This document shows positions 616-33,300 of a DNA stretch of 64,000 bases, piece by piece. This DNA is from Perna viridis (Eukaryota), in assembly GCA_037379345.1 (NCBI GenBank), contig CM074515.1, positions 16,182,001 through 16,246,000 of the forward strand. Direction: 5' to 3'. The stretch's first letter is position 1, and each line of letters begins with the position of its first letter. Position numbers and translations under genes: made by a program. A model generated the notes under the pieces. That model searched no databases. It was not told the DNA's origin and saw only the letters and a list, made by a program, of their open reading frames with translations.

Positions 616-711
616 ATCAATGATGTCAAGTGTTTTAAACTGTAATTGAACTACTCTTGTGGACTTCACCATAGCACTTTACAATAAATAGAAATATATA
701 TCTGATTTCAG

Positions 712-2551
712 AGCTCTTTTCCCATGTGGTGATAAGATGGTTGCTATTATTGATGACCGAGAAGATGTCTGGAACTTTGCCCCAAATCTAATCCATGTTA
801 AACCCTACAGGTTCTTCCAGGGAACAGCTGATATAAATGCTCCCCCTGGTCTTACTAAGACTGAACATGATCTAGAACCAGTTCACCATAGAGTCAGGAC
901 AATATCTAGGTCAAAGTCTGTTGAAAATGAGGCTGAGGACAAAGTCAGTGAGCAAGATGAGAAAGATGAATCTACCGAAATGAATAAAGAGGAAAACACA
1001 GTAACTAATGATGAGAATGAAGACAACAAACTTTCTGATGAAGTAGAAACAAAAAATACCAAATTTGGGAATAAAGTTGAGTTGGAAAATAAAGATTCAC
1101 AGTTAAAGCCCAACAATGAAGAACCTACAGAAAACATGGAAAAAGTTGACATGGTATCTGACAATAACAATAAAGATGGTCTAAGCAAAGATCTTTCTAC
1201 TGAGGATAACACTGAACCTAAAATATCTGATGATATCAATCAAAAAGAGAATAAAGATAAGTCTGATAACACAGATTCTGAGAAAAATGAGGAAGGTATG
1301 GATGTGGATGATAGGAAGGATGGTCAAGGAACCAACCCAGTTAATGATGAAAGAGATTGTAAGAATTCAAAAAATCCAGAAAGTGAGGGTACAGATCAGC
1401 AGAAAAGTGGTGAAAAAGATAAATCAAATAATAAGGAGTCAGAAGAGGATGTTGTGATTGAATGGGATGATGATGATGATTATTTATTGTATCTTGAGGA
1501 AATTCTTACAAGAATTCATAAAACATTCTTTGACTTTTATGATCAGATAAAAAATAAAAATGAACAGCAGGAAATGCCAGATCTTAAAGATATTATAACC
1601 TACATCAAAAAGAAAGTTCTTCAAGGTGTCAATATTGTGTTCAGTGGAGTTTTTCCAACAAATATAGACCCTGAGAAAAGTAGAGCTTATGTTGTAGCTA
1701 GAGCTCTTGGGGCTAACATTCATACAAACATCATTCCTAAAGGTGATGTAGAAAAAGGTAAAGCAACCACACATCTCATAGCAGCAAAACTTGGTACTAA
1801 CAAGGTCAAATTAGCTCAAAAGACAAGAGGAATTAAAATAGTAAATCCAAATTGGTTGTGGAATTGTGCTGAGAGATATGAGCATGTCGATGAGCGTTTG
1901 TTTCCTTTAGAAAAAGAAAATTCACGATCTGATACTGTGGATTCTCCTGATGTTACGCAGGAAAGATCAAGGAAAAGAAAATCAGACGAAACTGAATTAG
2001 ATTGTGTATCAGAAAAACGTTTGAGAAAGAATGATGGGGACCAAGGAACGTCCAACGATGAGGTATTAAAATCTGGTGCAAATGACAATATTCCTGGTCA
2101 TAGTGGACAAGACAGTGTTGACAATCCATTATTTTCTAGGACATACAATCCATTGTTAGCATTTTCTGATGATGATTTGGCTTGCATGGATAAAGAGGTT
2201 GAGGACATTATGGATGAGGATCCAGATGAAAATTCATCTGAAGATGATGACGAGAGGGATTCCAGGATGAGATCTCGTGTACTAAGTAGTGAAAGTGGTG
2301 AGTCATCGTCAGAAGACAGTTTATCAGGTGATTTACCAAGAGGTTGGAAAAGGAAATCAGGATCAAGTGATAGCCCTCATAGCTCAGATAAAGATGAAAT
2401 TAATGACCATGAAAATGAGAATGACCTTGACAAGTTCGAGAATATTGTGGAAGCTTTTGCTCCTGACACAGAATCTGATGACAATGATTCTATTGGTTCT
2501 ATGGATGATGAAATGGCTGCTGCTATAGACAAGGAGTTTTTAGGCATTTAA
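712..2551 (+). CDS. CTDP1: RNA polymerase II CTD phosphatase FCP1, terminal coding exon (upstream exons lie outside the window)
   Basis: Acceptor TTTCAG at 711, then ALFPCGDKMVAIIDDREDVW (FCPH C-terminal motif), an acidic insert, DDDDYLLYLEEIL, a BRCT domain (VLQGVNIVFSG...THLIAAKLGTNKV...VNPNWLWNC) and an acidic tail ending DDEMAAAIDKEFLGI; TAA at 2549-2551. Confidence 0.95.
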
Positions 2552-16200: not shown

Positions 16201-19200
16201 ATAAACATAATTACATGTATGTTTATTAGTGATGTCATACTAGATTTGATGTAATGCCAATCAAAATTGCTGAAATTTATCAGTACTGATGCAGTCAGTG
16301 TTGGTGTTGTAATACCTACATGTAGTTCAGTATACAGTGCTTGGTTTTATGAAAAAATCTCAAATTGAGATTTTCCTCAAATCTTTCATATCCTTCTCAA
16401 AAACTCAGGATTTAATGAAATTCTCAGCTTGAGATTATTTTATGAAACTCGGACCATAACTAACAAAACTTCCATTTTTAACTACATGTAAATGATATTT
16501 ATGCATTTTTATAGATTGCTGATTTAGCAAATGAAGATACACCACAATTGTACACTTTGTGTGGGAGAGGACCCAGGTCTACTCTAAGAGTTTTGAGACA
16601 TGGATTGGAGGTCAGTATTCAATGTCTTTCAATCTAGTTTTATGTGTTGTGGCAAGGAATAGTACATGTATGCATTAAAAGGTCTTTGGTTTTTTTTTAT
16701 ATATTAAGGCAAGTGATGTATTTTGGGCTTATTAAGAAATAAAATTTATGGTTATTTTCTGAACATTCAAGAATTTGTTTTTTGTTTTGTTTTATTAAAA
16801 AATTGAAAGTTCTTCCAAAAGCCTTTTAGAAATTTTCAGGATCTTAGTTGCAAATCATACATTTCTTAATCAAATCATCATGATGCAACATCTATGTAAT
16901 GATTACATGTTGAGGTAGAAGCTGTTGTTTATTTTTTAGGTATCAGAAATGGCTGTCTCAGAACTGCCTGGTAACCCTAATGCTGTATGGACTGTCAAGA
17001 AAAATGTAGATGGTAACTTTAGATTTCATATTCTGTAGGTGTGTGGACAGTGTTTATAACACTGGAGAGGACTTGTAATTCTTTGTTTTTAGGTAGTAGA
17101 TCCCAAATTAAATGTTCCTGTATCTTATTGTTCCTTATATTTTCTCTCTTGAATTTGAGATACTTTCTACATTTTAAATATTTTTGAAATGCTAAAAGTC
17201 TTTGTAACAGTTTGTAGTTATAGTTGTAAACATTTAATTTGGGTATCTGGTTGATAACTATTGAACAGTCACATTGAAATATTCATGCAGATTGAATTGT
17301 AGTTTTAGAAACAAAGCTTTTATATGAAATATTTATGACATGATTATTGTTCAAACTGCTGTTGTAATACATCTTTGTAAGTTTTTATGAAATCAAGTAT
17401 TTTTCTGCATGAATTTCAAAGTTGACCAACTCTTGTACTTGTCTAAATGTGTGTTACAAACATCATGATCAATAGTAGTCACAGAAGGGCTTGATAGATA
17501 GGGAAAGTTGTTTATAACATTCAGATCTTATCTTGCCTATTCTGGTCATCAGTGTGAAAACTGATAGGGAACAGAAGTCCCTCAAGACCTACAACCTTTC
17601 TTAAGAAGTAGATTAATATGGGCTGGTGCTATGGAACTATTCCAACACCAAGCCTATTTTCTAATTTCAGGTGCAGTCTAAGAAGTTCCATGACAGTAAT
17701 CAGGTGGGTAGGCTGGTAGATATCTCTACTGGCATGACTACATGGTGTACTATGACACTTTAGCTGATTCCATAGAATGTTGCTTCTAATAAAATGGTTG
17801 TCAGTGTCTACAGGTGTTGACACATTTCCAGGAAGCAGATTAAGACCATGCTATTGAACCTTATTTCTAGAATGCAGAGTCTAGTTAGTTGATGACTATG
17901 AAAACAGAAAATCTAGTGCTACAGGATTCTCTCTTAAATGAATGTGACTTAATGTTTTGATTAAGTTTATTTAAACCATAGTTTTGAGCGATTCTGTGAA
18001 AACTTGTTTTTATACCCCTGCAGACGAAGTTAAAGAATAAAGGAATCACACAGTTCTTCTGTTCACTAACATATATCATATAAGCATACATGGAACTTAT
18101 CCTAAATGTAGTTGTGCATGAAGGAAGATAATTTTTTTGGATGCCTGCAACTTAAATTTTGTTTTACATTATAAAATCTTGTTAACACAACTGCTGATGG
18201 TCTATTAATTTTGATAGAATGTATGTAAGTTTTGTATCATGTGCATTAAGGAAAGTAATTTTGGTCTGATGCTTGAGATCATGTAACTTCACAGTTTAAG
18301 ATTATTTATATCCATATGAAGTGGAAGGTATTTTCTTTGAGCTTGTTCACAGTATTTCTAGTTGGTTTGAGACAAGACAAACAAGTAGTTATTGCTTATG
18401 TCTTTTAAAACTTACCATTTAAGTCACATTCAGAGCTTTTCCAACAAAATGTGCAAGTGGTTAACATGTTAATGGTCTTGCATTCAATACTCTTGTGGAT
18501 TGATGGATGTGATTTCTTTAGAATTTGTGAAAACTCTCTATTTTTGTACTCCCACTCAAGTAGTGATGTATACTGGAATTCCCTTGTCAACCTGTCATTT
18601 CATCTGTCTGTCTTTGAGTGTTTTGGTATAAAAGTTTTGTCCATTTGGGGTGCAAGTCATCACTAAGTTAGTTTGGGCTTTTTATATGTAACGAAATGTG
18701 TCCAGATTGTATCTTTTTTTGGCCCTTTGGAACATGATTATTGAAAATTTAATAGAACTTGGAATGACATAAAGCAAACAGTATCATGTTAGCATTATCA
18801 TTGTTGCAAATTAATCAACTTGAGAAATTGTTTAAGTATTTAATTTCAGTAAATACAGGTATAAGGAACTCATCCTTATGAAATAAGAATTGTAGGGGTC
18901 TAAAGCATAATTATAATTTACTGTTCATTCTATTTACAGAGGAATATGATGCCTACATTATTGTGTCCTTCGTAAACGCTACCTTGGTATTGTCTATTGG
19001 AGAAACTGTTGAAGAAGTTACAGATTCTGGTTTCTTAGGTACAACTCCTACATTGTCCTGTTCACAGCTTGGAGATGATGCTCTTGTTCAAGTAAGTTTA
19101 TCAGTTGTATAAGGGAGCATTGATAGAAGTATTGATAAGCAGATCATCATTAAATATTCTGCCACAATATGAAAAAATCCTGGATTCTCATCCAAATTAG

Positions 19201-22200
19201 TTCATAATTTTGGTTGAGTGGGCTAATTTTATGTTTTATCAGTTAAAATGAAAAATGCTGTCAATTTTAAACAAATCATTCGAAATTGGACAAAAAATCA
19301 AAATCAAATTTTTGAGTCTGCTGAATGACAATAAAAATCTCATGATAAAAGTAATGGTATTTTTCAGATTTACCCAGATGGAATTCGTCACATTAGATCC
19401 GACAAGCGTGTTAATGAATGGAAAACACCAGGAAAGAAGAGCATTGTCAAGTGTGCTGTAAATCAGAGACAGGTTGTCATTGCTCTTACTGGTGGTGAAC
19501 TAGTCTACTTTGAAATGGACCCAGTGAGTGTTGTAATATTGTAGTGGGCTATGTGATGAATACTGGGAAATGACTAAACATATTTGTAACTTAGTGGTAA
19601 ACAGCACTGTATGGTTTGGCCTGATAACCTGCAGTAACTTGATAATATGTCCATTGGTTGGGATACACTTTGGTGTAGTTTGATATACCAGAATAATTTG
19701 CTACTATTTTTATGAATAAATTCAATATCTTTGATAATTCCTTAGCACCTTATTATGTAATACATGTATATGCATTTGGTAGAGATACTTTATCTTTTCA
19801 GACAGGTCAGTTAAATGAATACACAGAAAGGAAAGAAATGTCATCTGACGTAGTTTGCATGGCATTAGGAAGAGTACCAACTGGTGAACAGAGGTGTAGA
19901 TTCTTGGCTGTGGGTCTCTCAGATAACACAGTCAGGATTGTGTCATTGGACCCATCAGTAAGTTTACACAGATTTAAAGTTGTTTCATAGTCCGTGAGTT
20001 CCATCAAATCCTCTTTGTGTAATGCAACTCATAAGACATCCACCAGGGTCCTCCATCCAGCTTTGTCTTTTGCTATTCTTTCCATTTCAACCAAATCCTT
20101 GAATGCAGTCAAAATAAATGATAATTAATGATGGATGAATGAATGATATGTGCTTACTGTGTATTTCAGAAAAAAAGGGGAAACTCATTGTGCATTTTGT
20201 TTGAGTGATTACTTGAAATATATTAATGACACACTAAGATGATAGTTAATATAAATGTTTGCTTTATTTTACAGGATTGTTTGTCCCCTTTGAGTATGCA
20301 GGCTTTACCTGAACCTCCTGAGTCGTTGTGTATAGTAGAGATGGGTGGTACAGAGTCTAAAGAAGAAACAGGAGAACCAGGAAGTGTTGGAGGGCTCTTC
20401 CTCAATATTGGACTTCAGGTGTGATATTGTAGTACAAAAACAAAATGTGATATCTTTCAAGTCTTTTCAGAAAGATCTTTCAATTTGAAAATTGTGTTTA
20501 TCTAGTAGAGAGTTTTTGAAGGTACCCTCAAAACTTTTGAGTCATTTGTATTTGAAGAAAATTGAATCAATTGTATTTGAAAAATGCTTCACACAAGTTA
20601 AAATAATGTTATCACTCTATATCATGGGATGAAATTCAGGAAAAAATTGTAAGACAGACTGATGGTAAACTACATGTGAAATTTCTAAGGGCATAAAAAA
20701 GATACAATCTGAACACTGTTTGTTATATTAAAAAAGCCAAACTAGACTTAGTGGTGATCTGCACTCCATATGGACAAAACACTTAAGCCAAAACACTCAA
20801 AGTTTGGAAGGTACCCTCAAAAGGTATGGTCCCCTCCTTTAAAACTCTCATGATATGAAACCGTGACTGTCAGGAACAGTATGAACTAGGGAGTTCTGTA
20901 ATGTAGTGCCTTTATGTGCAAGTAGAGTGTGTGATACCCCCAGTCAACAAGTGGATGATAACTGAAATCACCTGGACTGTCCTTCCATCTGAATTTCATC
21001 GCAATTAATTCAATTCTCATTTTCAAATTTGGTGTGTGGATTTTTATAGATGCTTTATATATTGTAAGTGATTTTTGTTGCTGTCAGGTAACTTCGTGTT
21101 CCATGTGACTTAGCCATTTACACTTTATGGAATGGTAGAGATAATTCTCTGCTCCAATGGAGGAATTGATTTCAAATTTAGTAGTGAGTTTTATATAGAT
21201 ATGGCACAGTTGTAAGCAATTTTCATTGCAGTCCAAAATCAACTTCTTTTACAAGTTAGAGTATACCTAGTGTGACAATGTGTTCAAATTTCATGTTCAT
21301 AATATACATTTTTTAGTAATGAAAATGGTTTGGATAGCAGTATGGTGAATTGAGAAATAACAATTAGTTGTTTTGTCTTTGATTTTAATTACAGAATGGT
21401 GTTTTACTGAGGACAGTATTGGACACAGTAACTGGTGATTTATCTGATACAAGAACAAGATATTTAGGATTAAGACCTGTCAAACTCTTCAGAATAACCA
21501 TGCAAGGATCTGAAGCTGTAAGTGCCTTACTTTCTCAGATATGAAATAATCCTGATATACTATCATTATAATAAGTAAAGTCTGATCATGACAGTAAATT
21601 TTTAAGATGATAATGTAGGATTTGAGTTGATAAAGAGAAAGTAAATGAATGTTAAGGATGTAGAGGTCAATCTAAAAACACTAAAGCCACTCTGTAGGTA
21701 CACTGTTAGGGTTAAGGATAGATTTTAAATGTTTTTCTTTTTTCCATGTTTTGCAATGTTTAAATAAAATATTATTGTATTAATTCTTGTATAGTAATTG
21801 CATCTTTCACGTAATAACCTATTATTAATAAATTTAATCTTCTATTCAGGTGCTTGCCATGTCCAGTAGGTCTTGGCTGAGTTATACATACCAAAACAGA
21901 TTTCATTTGACTCCATTATCATATGAATCACTAGAATATGCCTCTGGTTTTGCGTCAGAACAGTGTCCTGAGGGAATTGTAGCCATCTCCACAAATACTT
22001 TAAGGTAGGTTAAAAAAATACCTCTTTAAGAGTTCAAAGTTCAGCAATAATTTATAATCTTATCGTGTGAGTGCGAAGAAATGTAGATTAAGTCGTGTAC
22101 AAATTTTTGGTGCAGAAAAGTTGGTGCAATTATATACTAAATTTGAATTATTTTCGTGTAGAGCAAACAATGTCTTTATATAAAAGGATTGTGAAGTATA

Positions 22201-30324: not shown

Positions 30325-33300
30325 TCATTTTTGTTTTATACTGTAATCCAGCGACCGGTTACATACTTCCTGGATCCAATCCCTTTCCTTAGTCCGTTTG
30401 TGTGCAACTACCTTAATTTCTGTGTTTCCGAACTCGAAATCTACCAGAATTTCCACTGAGTAATTTGACGGTTCATTTAGATCAATTTTTATCTCCGCCA
30501 ATTTCTTGCATCCGTTATCGTCTATGTATTCAGGGTTTTCATATGGACTGTAATATACACGCAACTTAGCGAATTCTTGATTTTTGTCAATGGTTTTAAA
30601 AGTATGGGAGCGTTTTTCACCAAGGGATACTCGCGTTTTGGCGGAGACCAATTGATGGAAAGTGTCCGAACAACGCTTAACCCCATTGACCCATATTGCC
30701 CTGCTTTTATGATGCTTTGTTGGATCAAACCTTACACTGCTTGCGATCCCATACGTATACTTTAGTAACCTAGAACATATGACATCGGGTTTATGTCCAT
30801 ACGTTACAGCCCCTTTCAAAACTGCGGTTGAAGCCTCTTCCACTGTTTGAACTCTTCCGGGAAATATTTCCTTTAAAGCATTTTGGACAATAGACGATTC
30901 AGATAGTCCACCGACTAAATAAAATGTATCAACGTCATTTGAATCGCAAGCTTCTAATGTGTTTTGTATTAATGACTCTATTTTTTTTATTGTAGTTTTG
31001 AACATTGAAAGATAGAATTCCTCTTTAAATTCTAATTTATCTTTAAATACTTTAAGGCTTTCTGCATGTTTCGATGTCCCCAGTAAATCAATGAAGTTCT
31101 TATTCTTGGTATTTTCCAAGCAAAGGGAATTAAATATTGCAATTGGAATCTGCAATCGTTTTGAGGTAGAACCGGATTTCTTTTTGAACTCTTCAATAGA
31201 CATCTGAAGATCTGAATATTCTTCTAAGTAGTCTTTCTTTAGCTTTAACATCATGTCAGTTCCCATCACATCACGAAAAATGTGTAAAAATGCATTATCA
31301 ATATCTGTACCACCGCATTTTTCGCCACATGGAATACATATATTTTTCATCTGGCCATCCTGTAAAACTTCCTGAACAACTGTATCGGTAGTGCCGCCTG
31401 AAAATTAAATAATTCGAAATAAATACAAGGTCGTAGCCAAGGGGAGGTGCGACGGGTGCGATCGCATCCCCTTTTAAAAAATACTTTGATTTACATCTTA
31501 GCCTGTAATTAAAGAGAAATCATACCAGGTAACCAAGTAAAATTGCTTATCGGTGATCAGTTTGCACCCTACCCCCATTCAGAAAACCTGGCTACGGCCC
31601 TGTAATATCTGGCAAAATTTAATGGGTTGTGTAAATTCCAATATGATAGATACTCGCAATTTTATACTTTGGAAAACATTACGGACCCAAGGGCCGACAT
31701 TTTTATTATTTTCTATACACAATAATATGATTTATTTTTAGACAACAATTTGTCCGTTTTTCATTTAGGCCAGAGCAGATTTACTTGAAAAAAAGAATTG
31801 TCAAGTTATTATTGAATTATTATAGGGGATCTTGTCGAATAAAACAAGTAGGATATCGTGAAAAAGAAACAAAAAGTCAAGTTAAGAATGTAACTAAACA
31901 ACCTCCAATGTCGACAAGTAGGAACTTTTGCTGTTTTTGAATGAAGCCCTTTGTCCAACAGTACACTGCTGCAGTCTCAGGCTCGTGGGCCAAGCAAAGG
32001 TATTTCCCGAGACCAGCCTGAAATGGTGAATTTACCGTTTAAANNNNNNNNNNNNNNNNNNNNNNNNNNNNNNNNNNNNNNNNNNNNNNNNNNNNNNNNN
32101 NNNNNNNNNNNNNNNNNNNNNNNNNNNNNNNNNNNNNNNNNNNNNNNNNNNNNNNNNNNNNNNNNNNNNNNNNNNNNNNNNNNNNNNNNNNNAACACACG
32201 ACATAATTTCAAAAACAGCGAAAAACCTTTATAACAACAACAAAAAATACAAAAGCAGTCATCTGAGCTTGAAAATGGTTTTCTTTTGTTTCGATTCATG
32301 TTGAGTTGATAATTTCTTACTCTTAAAAATAAATCACACACCAGCACTCACACACACAACCAGACTATTATTTTTGCCGTCTACACACCTTTTTTCCGCA
32401 CTGTCGCATGAAATTCTTTGCTGCCTCTGACCAGATTGTAGGCACCGTAAGCACCCATGATATCATATTCTCTTGGAACTCAGGATGTGAAGCCTTGAAG
32501 TGGTCACTCAAGACTTTTATGGAAGCAATAAAAACCGTTTCTGCCTTGAGTGGTTTTCCTGAGACATCTTCAACCACGAATCCATCTTCATTTACCTACA
32601 TGCATTAACATGTTATCAAGGATTAATTCGGAAAGAGATTAAGTTTGCGAATATGGACCGTTACTTTAATCGACACTGCATATAATGGGAAAACGAACGG
32701 ATTATGGTGAAACACGTAAAAACCTACACCAGATAGTAAATACATGTACTTTCAGTAGAATCATTTCATCAGCAGAATAGACCCGTCAGTGAAAGGCCTT
32801 TCTTAATTTGTAATTTATCCACTTTTCATTCAATTTCACGGGCACCAGATGTACTTTTGTTCATTATACATTGTAAAATAACTAATCTTAAATCAAGTAA
32901 TATGATGTATTGAAATATTACATTTTAATTGGTGATTTTATCAGCTAAAGTGTTTTAGTGGTTAAAACTCAGTTCTTCATACGATATACACATCAATTCT
33001 ATGTCTAACTATCCACAACACAATATTAACAGTATTTCTTTTTTGTGAACCAGTGGGTGGAAGTATGATGAAAATATAAACGTGATACTGTTTAACACAA
33101 ACTCGTTTTAAGTGTTTACGCACAACTTTTAAATTTATACGCAAATCAAAATACTTTTTTCTAAGGGAAAAAAAAATTAAACGTGTCAATTTTAATAAAT
33201 ACTAAAACCAAGGCTGATGTTCTTAGTTTCATGTATGAATGAAAATAATAACATTAGAGAACGTCTAATGGACTTTTACCTGTTCGCTGTAAAGATTCAT

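What the first reader, a model, noticed from the sequence alone, without database searches (positions are those of the whole stretch)
17480..17830. Candidate structure-gated poison exon in SF3B3, a possible autoregulatory switch of the branch-point-recognition complex
Seen: coding intron 12 (17013-18939) is the longest intron in the coding region and holds a 33-nt segment with a good acceptor (TTTTCTAATTTCAG, 17670) and donor (CAG|GTGGGT, 17704). Although 33 nt preserves frame, inclusion gives GGT GCA GTC TAA, a premature stop far upstream of the last junction. A long hairpin lies just upstream (17618-17657: ATGGGCTGGTG..TGGAA/TTCCA..CACCA.GCCTAT) and separates a branch-point-like GATTAAT (17611-17) from the pyrimidine tract. 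A 9-bp hairpin follows the donor (GCTGGTAGA/TCTACTGGC, 17712-17733), with more stems at 17544-17589 and 17799-17822. TGCATG motifs occur at 17406 and 18115 and an ACTAAC at 18065. Known: many splicing factors autoregulate through AS-NMD poison exons, and SF3b recognises the branch point. Inference: inclusion may depend on a hairpin-bridged branch point, letting SF3b level feed back on SF3B3 mRNA.
Basis: partly seen in the sequence, partly recalled or inferred. Interest (0 to 1): 0.8.

Follow-up and report, generated by a model that had tools for sequence, protein, structure and literature searches.

The report
Known SF3B3 poison exon with stem-loop
The 33-base stop-codon exon and the hairpin in front of it are real and are spliced into RNA, but they are this mollusc's copy of a stem-loop-controlled "poison exon" of the splicing-factor gene SF3B3 published in 2024 for flies and humans, so the finding is correct but not new.

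Summary
Assembled contigs of public RNA runs carry both junctions of the 33-nt exon: 17012|17671 in one run, and 17703|18940 in two runs from two studies. They sit beside the normal 17012|18940 junction, at roughly 10-25% of its contig depth.

The element is already published. Li et al. 2024 (NAR 52:6002, PMC11162794) describe a conserved stem-loop that hides branch sites just upstream of a poison exon in animal SF3B3. The window's arms match their vertebrate consensus (GGCUGGU...ACCAAGCC; right arm 13/15).

I found the same module in front of the same exon in 12 other animal contigs. Published fly and human experiments show the stem represses inclusion by hiding branch adenosines in its right arm. 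U2/SF3 knock-down lowers inclusion.

One point may be new.

The hairpin after the donor, the other stems, TGCATG and the distal ACTAAC are not conserved or are at chance.

The parts
16940..17012 (+). SF3B3 exon upstream of the regulated intron (encodes [24 protein letters not shown] plus the first base of the next codon)
   Evidence: Translation. RNA joints 16610|16940 and 17012|18940. The same peptide lies upstream of the module in the other animal contigs.
17013..18939 (+). Regulated intron, 1927 nt, phase 1. It lies directly before the exon that matches human SF3B3 residues 469-518.
   Evidence: GT..AG joint 17012|18940 in runs X1, X6 and X8. PDB match of the downstream exon.
17611..17617 (+). 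Branch-point-like box GATTAAT (family consensus UACUAAY), ending 1 nt before the stem
   Evidence: TAA[CT] lies within 22 nt 5' of the stem in 12 of 13 lineages. For six loci, the product of the per-locus background frequencies is 1.9e-6, a post hoc figure. Function not shown.
17618..17636 (+). Left arm of the conserved stem-loop (core GGCTGGTG)
   Evidence: Folds. Matches the published vertebrate left arm GGCUGGUACUUGGUG. The combined pattern GGCTGGT-N-ACCAAGCC is unique in the window, with 0 of 100 shuffles matching.
17640..17657 (+). Right arm of the stem-loop (TTCCAACACCAAGCC). It carries adenosines 17644, 17645, 17647, 17650 and 17651, the inferred concealed branch sites, 19-26 nt from the AG.
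   Evidence: 13 of 15 identical to the published vertebrate right arm, with 0.07 chance matches expected per 64 kb. CTGG...CCAG is invariant in all 13 sequences. Branch-site use is inferred from fly and human experiments and was not tested here.
17658..17670 (+). Pyrimidine tract and 3' splice site (TTTCTAATTTCAG). Its AG is the first AG after the stem.
   Evidence: Joint 17012|17671 in X1. The spacer is 10-19 nt with no other AG in all lineages.
17671..17703 (+). 33-nt poison exon; in-frame TAA at 17679-17681
   Evidence: Both junctions are seen in RNA contigs. Orthologous exons of 29-64 nt each carry an in-frame stop or a frameshift. 33-nt exons followed by a GTGGGTA donor also occur in L082 and L084.
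17704..17709 (+). 5' splice site of the poison exon (GTGGGT)
   Evidence: Joint 17703|18940 in X1 and X8, two studies.
17712..17733 (+). Hairpin after the donor (GCTGGTAGA/TCTACTGGC). Real fold, specific to this lineage or due to chance.
   Evidence: -10.0 kcal/mol. Donor+1..+45 has z = -2.4 here, but no matching hairpin occurs in the five other lineages tested (one has a different, marginal stem).
18940..19091 (+). SF3B3 exon downstream of the regulated intron
   Evidence: 48 of 50 residues identical to human SF3B3 469-518. Joints 17012|18940 and 19091|19368.

Best explanation
This is the bivalve orthologue of the published SF3B3 poison-exon module (Li et al. 2024). When the 33-nt exon 17671-17703 is spliced between exons 12 and 13, it places a TAA after three codons, near residue 468 of about 1217. 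The mRNA then yields no SF3B3 and is expected to be degraded by nonsense-mediated decay. How often the exon is used is set at its 3' splice site. The weak branch adenosines that serve it lie in the right arm of a 16-bp stem-loop (17618-17657), which hides them. When the stem is closed the exon is skipped and productive mRNA is made. When the stem opens, or U2 snRNP is abundant enough to invade it, the exon is included and SF3B3 output falls.

Shown here: the anatomy, its conservation, and use of both splice junctions in RNA.
Inferred from fly and human experiments: branch sites on the right arm, a repressive stem, sensitivity to U2/SF3a/SF3b levels, and decay of the included isoform.
For: RNA. 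Joints 17012|17671 (X1, contig depth 22.4) and 17703|18940 (X1 26.4; X8 11.4) lie beside 17012|18940 (X1 68.6; X6 32.7; X8 93.2). In X1 the depths into and out of the exon balance: 10.2 + 22.4 in, 6.3 + 26.4 out. One X8 contig runs from unspliced intron at 17370 through the exon into exon 13. So the downstream half-intron can be removed while the upstream half is still present, as expected if the exon's 3' splice site is the slow, regulated step.

Homology to the published element. The right arm matches the vertebrate consensus at 13 of 15 positions, with 0.07 chance matches expected. GGCTGGT-N-ACCAAGCC is unique in the window, 0 of 100 shuffles. The stem has 16 bp with a bulged A as in vertebrates, and the G17628-C17646 pair replaces the vertebrate A-U.

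Conservation. The module lies directly upstream of the same exon in 12 other animal contigs. These include sequences fitting the published insect consensus CUGGUGnnUUG / CnRACAYCAG. The stems tested have z between -2.9 and -4.5. Every exon has a stop or a frameshift.

Gene identity. PDB SF3B3 E = 1.7e-24; Pfam RSE1 first propeller and CPSF_A.

Published mechanism.
Against: No branch point was mapped in this species. By sequence alone the conserved UACUAAY-like box 5' of the stem is a better U2/SF1 site than anything in the right arm. The apical loop has 3 nt, against the published 5-8. Formal covariation on a fixed-column alignment is weak because the core is invariant: score 0.120, reached or exceeded by 46 of 500 shuffles. 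The RNA evidence is assembled contigs from runs whose RNA label is a guess, so the depths are rough. X6 shows no inclusion. Decay by NMD and dependence on U2 were not tested here. An inclusion of about a quarter in X1 is high for an efficiently degraded isoform.
Confidence: 0.75

Rival explanations
1. One reading: the functional branch point is the UACUAAY-like box (A17616) just 5' of the stem. The closed stem brings it from 54 nt to an effective 15 nt or so from the AG and hides the AG inside the right arm. The stem would then promote, or be needed for, inclusion.
For: The box lies within 0-8 nt of the stem base in 12 of 13 lineages, and 10 of 13 have [AC][CT]TAA[CT]. Every right arm contains a CAG that the stem would mask, and the true acceptor is the first AG after the stem. 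In L006 and L085 the stem is only 7 bp, with few paired adenosines, yet TACTAAT is perfectly kept about 40 nt from the AG.
Against: Published fly and human minigenes: destabilising the stem raises inclusion; mutating the five right-arm adenosines abolishes it; compensatory right-arm changes that restore the stem nearly abolish inclusion rather than restoring the wild-type level. The upstream box is therefore not sufficient in those species. Lariat and branch-site data there place the branches on the right arm.
Confidence: 0.15
2. Splicing noise: a chance pseudo-exon that is occasionally used and has no regulatory role.
For: X6 shows no inclusion. The evidence is contigs, not reads. The exon sequence itself is poorly conserved.
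Against: The module is conserved in position, stem, spacer and stop-or-frameshift property across 13 lineages, including insect-like ones. The junctions appear in two independent studies at roughly 10-25% of the constitutive depth. Genome edits of the orthologous stem change SF3B3 level and phenotype in flies and human cells.
Confidence: 0.04
3. A competing-structure switch specific to this lineage. The second GGCTGGT copy (17711) and the donor-side hairpin (17712-17733) would offer the right arm an alternative partner that loops out the whole exon.
For: GGCTGGT occurs twice in the intron, P = 0.003 post hoc. The best duplex between the right arm and the downstream region has P = 0.056 in the window. 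The donor-side hairpin has z = -2.4.
Against: Not conserved. Duplex P values in the five other lineages are 0.19, 0.65, 0.73, 0.35 and 0.078, and combining all six by Fisher's method gives about 0.12. None of the five has a matching donor-side hairpin; one has a different stem at P = 0.043. L082, L084 and L008, which share its pyrimidine tract (L082 and L084 also its donor), lack it by eye.
Confidence: 0.06

Closest known systems
SF3B3 intronic stem-loop with concealed branch sites plus downstream poison exon (Li et al. 2024, Nucleic Acids Res 52:6002, PMC11162794; human exon 11a, Drosophila exon 5a)
   Same: Same gene. Same position, directly before the exon encoding E(Y/F)DAYIIVSF. Same arm sequences (GGCUGGU...ACCAAGCC with a bulged A). 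A 16-bp stem within the published 14-17 bp. A short exon with a premature stop 13 nt after the stem. Alternative inclusion seen in RNA.
   Different: A bivalve copy not named in the paper's main text. The apical loop has 3 nt rather than 5-8. The exon is 33 nt. A conserved UACUAAY-like box at the 5' foot of the stem is not mentioned in the paper's main text (its supplement could not be read).
AS-NMD poison exons of splicing regulators (SR proteins, hnRNPs and others; named from general knowledge, with Pervouchine et al. 2019 cited)
   Same: A cassette exon carrying a premature stop in a splicing-factor gene, used to hold the factor's level steady.
   Different: In the classic cases the protein binds its own exon, which is highly conserved. 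Here the exon sequence drifts. Control sits in an intronic stem and in general U2 snRNP availability. Direct autoregulation by SF3B3 itself has not been shown.
Yeast introns with structure between branch point and 3' splice site (refs 56-58 of Li et al.)
   Same: A hairpin lies between a consensus branch-point-like box and the pyrimidine tract/AG. It would shorten the effective distance and mask an internal AG.
   Different: In SF3B3 the experiments show the stem represses use of the acceptor and that the branches used lie inside the stem.
Recursive splice sites / RS-exons of long introns (from general knowledge)
   Same: The window's acceptor reads AG|GT, and the exon is a short cryptic exon with a stop.
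   Different: AG|GT is present in only 5 of 13 orthologues. The intron is only 1.9 kb. Both exon junctions are seen in mature-looking contigs.

Membership tests
SF3B3 concealed-branch-site stem-loop / poison-exon module (Li et al. 2024) | Lies in SF3B3, in the conserved intron whose flanking exons are homologous across animals ('homo-intron II') | tested here: met
   The downstream exon matches human SF3B3 residues 469-518 at 48 of 50 positions; Pfam RSE1 and CPSF_A. The module lies before the same exon in 12 other animal contigs, and where the contig reaches far enough (10 of the 12) also after the same upstream exon. Equivalence with human intron 11 was not checked on human sequence.
SF3B3 concealed-branch-site stem-loop / poison-exon module (Li et al. 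2024) | Stem of 14-17 bp interrupted by 1-2 nt, loop usually 5-8 nt | tested here: inconclusive
   16 bp, one bulged A, and one 3x1 internal loop, which is larger than the stated 1-2 nt. The apical loop has 3 nt, or 5 if the closing A-U pair opens. Stem length fits; loop and internal loop deviate slightly.
SF3B3 concealed-branch-site stem-loop / poison-exon module (Li et al. 2024) | Arm sequences match the consensus (vertebrates GGCUGGUACUUGGUG / UACCAAUACCAAGCC; insects CUGGUGnnUUG / CnRACAYCAG) | tested here: met
   Right arm 13 of 15, with 0.07 chance matches expected per 64 kb. GGCTGGT...ACCAAGCC is unique, 0 of 100 shuffles. CTGG/CCAG is invariant in 13 of 13 sequences.
SF3B3 concealed-branch-site stem-loop / poison-exon module (Li et al. 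2024) | A poison exon with a premature stop immediately downstream of the stem | tested here: met
   The exon 17671-17703 starts 13 nt after the stem; TAA at 17679-17681.
SF3B3 concealed-branch-site stem-loop / poison-exon module (Li et al. 2024) | The exon is alternatively spliced (both included and skipped mRNAs exist) | tested here: met
   Joints 17012|17671, 17703|18940 and 17012|18940 in contigs of RNA runs from three studies.
SF3B3 concealed-branch-site stem-loop / poison-exon module (Li et al. 2024) | The branch adenosines used for the exon lie base-paired on the right arm | not testable with these tools
   Five adenosines lie at 19-26 nt from the AG, three of them paired in the predicted fold. 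No lariat data could be obtained, because the single read-laying run returned contigs only.
SF3B3 concealed-branch-site stem-loop / poison-exon module (Li et al. 2024) | Destabilising the stem raises inclusion; U2/SF3a/SF3b knock-down lowers it | not testable with these tools
   Bench experiments only. Published for fly and human.
AS-NMD autoregulated splicing-factor genes | The included isoform is stabilised when NMD is blocked, and the factor's own level changes inclusion | not tested
   No NMD-inhibited or knock-down data sets could be examined. The stop lies far upstream of the last exon junction.
Recursive splice site with RS-exon | Conserved AG|GT at the acceptor, which regenerates a 5' splice site | tested here: not met
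   AG|GT in 5 of 13 orthologues only. The regenerated site here would be ATG|GTGCAG, which is weak.

The most novel reading that the evidence does not exclude
The UACUAAY-like box at the 5' foot of the stem (GATTAAT here) is a conserved part of the module that the paper's main text does not mention. It could also be a decoy site, or an SF1/QKI-type protein site, that competes with the hidden right-arm branch sites. The switch would then be a choice between two branch sites rather than simple hiding of one.
Probability: 0.25. Interest if true: 0.5.

Novelty: already known. Interest (0 to 1): 0.3.

Why it matters
That shows the approach can find real RNA switches. For biology, the main message is confirmation. 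The SF3B3 stem-loop and poison-exon module exists and is used in a bivalve, and its arm cores are identical to those of vertebrates. This supports an origin before the split of protostomes and deuterostomes.

The only point that might add knowledge is the conserved branch-point-like box at the foot of the stem. If it is functional, it would refine the published 'concealed branch site' model. It is easy to test in the existing fly and human minigenes.

Tried and rejected
1. Alternative pairing of the right arm with the second GGCTGGT copy downstream. It is marginal in the window (P = 0.056) and not conserved; Fisher's method over six lineages gives about 0.12.

2. Donor-side hairpin as a conserved element. 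A matching hairpin is absent from the five other lineages tested; one has a different stem at P = 0.043.

3. RBFOX-type TGCATG and the distal ACTAAC. Both are at chance frequency, and no GCATG is conserved near the orthologous exons.

4. Recursive-splicing reading. AG|GT is not conserved.

5. Transposon origin of the exon and hairpin. The region is single-copy in the genome. A dispersed repeat does lie further downstream, at about 18106-18363.

6. Folding 17600-17740 as one piece gives only z = -1.47. The signal is in the individual stem, not in the whole region.

7. Fixed-column covariation count. It is weak because the core is invariant and bulges shift the register: score 0.120, reached or exceeded by 46 of 500 shuffles. 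MAFFT also misaligned the variable apical stems, so I built no covariance model.

8. The scan of bacterial and archaeal genome contigs for the exon found nothing.

9. Several contigs with the same intron and a 98-100% identical exon-13 peptide (L003, L005, L009, L013) show no recognisable module in the 1.5-6 kb available. This is loss, divergence or a longer intron; left unresolved.

10. Three long ENA contigs could not be read because the sample files were too large.

11. The paper's supplementary species list is not held, so I could not tell whether molluscs were in its survey.
Full report
**What is in the sequence.**

Exon 12 of the gene ends at 17012 (GTAGATG|gtaact). A pyrimidine-rich acceptor ends at 17670. 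A 33-nt segment (17671-17703) is followed by a strong donor, CAG|GTGGGT. Exon 13 starts at 18940. The intron is in phase 1, so inclusion reads G|GT GCA GTC TAA, with the stop at 17679-17681.

The gene is SF3B3. Exon 13 is 48 of 50 residues identical to human SF3B3 469-518 (E = 1.7e-24). Other exons hit the RSE1 first propeller and CPSF_A families. The map of open stretches fits the claim that this 1927-nt intron is the longest coding intron.

I searched exons one by one, by reference. I neither built nor searched a joined spliced model. The region 17480-17830 is single-copy in the 723-Mb genome.

**Structures.**

The 40-nt hairpin 17618-17657 folds to -18.2 kcal/mol. It has 16 bp, one bulged A, one small internal loop and a 3-nt apical loop. 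Only four other places in the AT-rich 64 kb fold as well, and its z-score against dinucleotide shuffles is -4.0.

The 9-bp hairpin after the donor (17712-17733, -10.0 kcal/mol) is also unusually stable for this window. The stem at 17544-17589 is moderately stable and the one at 17799-17822 is trivial. Folding 17600-17740 as a single piece gives only z = -1.47.

**RNA evidence.**

I laid contigs of four public runs from four studies on 16500-19550. The runs are labelled RNA only by guess, but X1, X6 and X8 carry GT..AG joints at every constitutive junction, so they are RNA. X5 shows no spliced joint.

- The normal joint 17012|18940 is present in X1, X6 and X8 (contig depths 68.6, 32.7, 93.2).
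- The joint 17012|17671 is present in X1 (22.4).
- The joint 17703|18940 is present in X1 (26.4) and X8 (11.4).

In X1 the depths entering the exon (10.2 from unspliced intron plus 22.4 from exon 12) equal those leaving it (6.3 into the intron plus 26.4 to exon 13).

In X8 one contig runs from unspliced intron at 17370 through the exon and is spliced to exon 13. The downstream half-intron can therefore be removed while the upstream half is still present. That fits a slow, regulated 3' splice site for the exon.

Contig depths are crude. As a rough guide, the included form is about a quarter of the junction depth in X1 and about a tenth in X8. No sequence variant was reported inside 17600-17740 in the four runs, while several lie in the flanking intron; the numbers are too small to interpret.

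The with/without-NMD-block comparison could not be done.

**It is already published.**

A full-text search led to Li et al. 2024, Nucleic Acids Res 52:6002 (PMC11162794). They describe a highly conserved stem-loop in animal SF3B3 genes that hides branch sites and sits just upstream of a poison exon (human exon 11a, Drosophila exon 5a).

- The stem has 14-17 bp and the loop 5-8 nt.
- The vertebrate arms are GGCUGGUACUUGGUG and UACCAAUACCAAGCC. The insect arms are CUGGUGnnUUG and CnRACAYCAG.
- The exon is reported in most animals except nematodes, fishes and spiders.

The window's arms are GGCTGGTGCTATGGAA (17621-17636) and TTCCAACACCAAGCC (17640-17654). The right arm matches the vertebrate consensus at 13 of 15 positions, with 0.07 such matches expected by chance in the window. 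The pattern GGCTGGT-N(10-35)-ACCAAGCC occurs once, and in none of 100 shuffles. The bulged A is kept. The pair G17628-C17646 replaces the vertebrate A-U, a compensatory double change.

**Independent comparative check.**

I searched metagenome contigs with the exon-13 peptide. I also ran the word search of protein fragments with it and then looked up the contigs that encode the hits. None of the contigs I used carries the human form of the peptide, and I took none for human.

The same module is present in 12 further lineages: L008, L082/83, L084/87, L088, L006, L085, L024, L018/20, L016/17, L019, L035 and L034. It lies directly before the exon-13 equivalent in all of them. Where the contig reaches far enough (10 of the 12), it also lies after the exon-12 equivalent.

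- CTGG and CCAG are invariant in all 13 sequences.
- The six stems tested have z between -2.9 and -4.5.
- The spacer from stem to AG is 10-19 nt and holds no other AG.
- Every exon (29-64 nt) has an in-frame stop or a frameshift.
- L016 and L019 fit the insect consensus.
- L082 and L084 share with the window a 33-nt exon, a GTGGGTA donor and a nearly identical pyrimidine tract.
- L006 and L085 have only a 7-bp stem.

A fixed-column count of covariation is weak: score 0.120, reached or exceeded by 46 of 500 shuffles. The core never varies, and bulges shift the register of the outer pairs (G-C in some lineages, A-U in others). The apical stems differ in sequence yet stay self-complementary in each lineage.

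**How it most likely works.**

Published minigene, antisense, SHAPE and genome-editing experiments in fly and human cells give the following.

- Disrupting the left arm raises inclusion (29% to 57% in fly, 60% to 87-94% in human).
- Mutating the five right-arm adenosines abolishes inclusion.
- Compensatory right-arm changes restore repression.
- Knock-down of U1-70K, U2AF38 and SF3a/SF3b subunits lowers inclusion.

In the window the right-arm adenosines (17644, 17645, 17647, 17650, 17651) lie 19-26 nt from the AG, a normal branch distance. Three are paired and two sit in a bulge or internal loop inside the helix.

The best-supported reading is that the stem hides weak branch sites. The exon is included when the stem opens or U2 is plentiful, and the resulting premature-stop mRNA lowers SF3B3 output. 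Direct autoregulation by SF3B3 itself is not shown, and nothing on mechanism was tested in this species.

The published data argue against that for fly and human.

However, the motif is not a chance hit. A TAA[CT] lies within 22 nt of the 5' foot of the stem in 12 of 13 lineages, all but L034:

- window GATTAAT
- L008 GACTAAC
- L082, L006 and L085 TACTAAT
- L084 CACTAAT
- L024 and L020 AACTAAT
- L016 TATTAAT
- L019 GTAATAAC
- L035 TACTAAC
- L088 TGTAAC

Ten of the 13 have [AC][CT]TAA[CT]. Background frequencies in the same introns are 4-18% per 16-nt window. Their product over the first six loci is 1.9e-6. I chose the motif after seeing the data, and the 13 lineages form about nine independent groups.

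The consensus UACUAAY is the canonical branch-point / SF1 / QKI-type site. With the stem closed it would sit an effective 11-24 nt or so from the AG. The paper's main text does not mention it, and its supplement is not held. Whether it is a second branch site, a decoy or a protein-binding site is unknown. I give the dual-site reading about one chance in four.

**Items without support.**

- The donor-side hairpin and the second GGCTGGT copy (P = 0.003 within this intron, post hoc) are not conserved.
- TGCATG and ACTAAC at 18065 occur at chance frequency, and no GCATG is conserved near the orthologous exons.
- AG|GT at the acceptor occurs in only 5 of 13 lineages, so a recursive-splice-site reading is rejected.

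**Verdict.**

The element is an orthologue of a published, experimentally dissected module, so the novelty class is 'already known'.

Earlier notes of this scan call the genome a mussel-like bivalve; I did not test that. The run of N near 32,040-32,190 was left untouched.

Noticed in passing
window 18106-18363: Both ends of this stretch belong to a dispersed repeat with at least 40 copies in the genome. High-depth RNA contigs from other copies give the odd non-GT..AG 'joints' at 18130-18133 -> 18338 in all four runs. The insertion accounts for part of the intron's length.
   Followed up: partly
window 17691-17699; L020 about 1680-1690; L008, L016, L024 and L088 poison exons: A short motif, TGAC(0-2 nt)ACAG, recurs inside the poison exons of distant lineages (CCATGACAG is shared by the window and L020). 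It may be an exonic splicing signal. I made no statistical test.
   Followed up: no
L003, L005, L009, L013 (upstream of the exon-13 match): These contigs have the same intron position and a 98-100% identical exon-13 peptide, but no recognisable stem/poison-exon module in the 1.5-6 kb available. This may be lineage loss, as the paper reports for nematodes, fishes and spiders, or a longer intron.
   Followed up: partly
L082/L083 and L084/L087: Two ENA samples each carry two long contigs with nearly identical copies of the SF3B3 module. These are haplotigs or a recent duplication.
   Followed up: no
window 692-2548 (+): A single 619-codon open stretch upstream of SF3B3, with a BRCT domain (Pfam E = 5e-7) and long acidic, serine-rich tails. 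It looks like the C-terminal exon of an FCP1/CTDP1-type phosphatase gene.
   Followed up: partly
window 18713 and 18779-18792: Polymorphisms between runs: a 1-nt insertion (X1) and a 14-nt deletion (X5) in the distal intron, plus SNPs at 17500, 17843, 17863 and 18380. None falls inside the box-stem-exon module.
   Followed up: no
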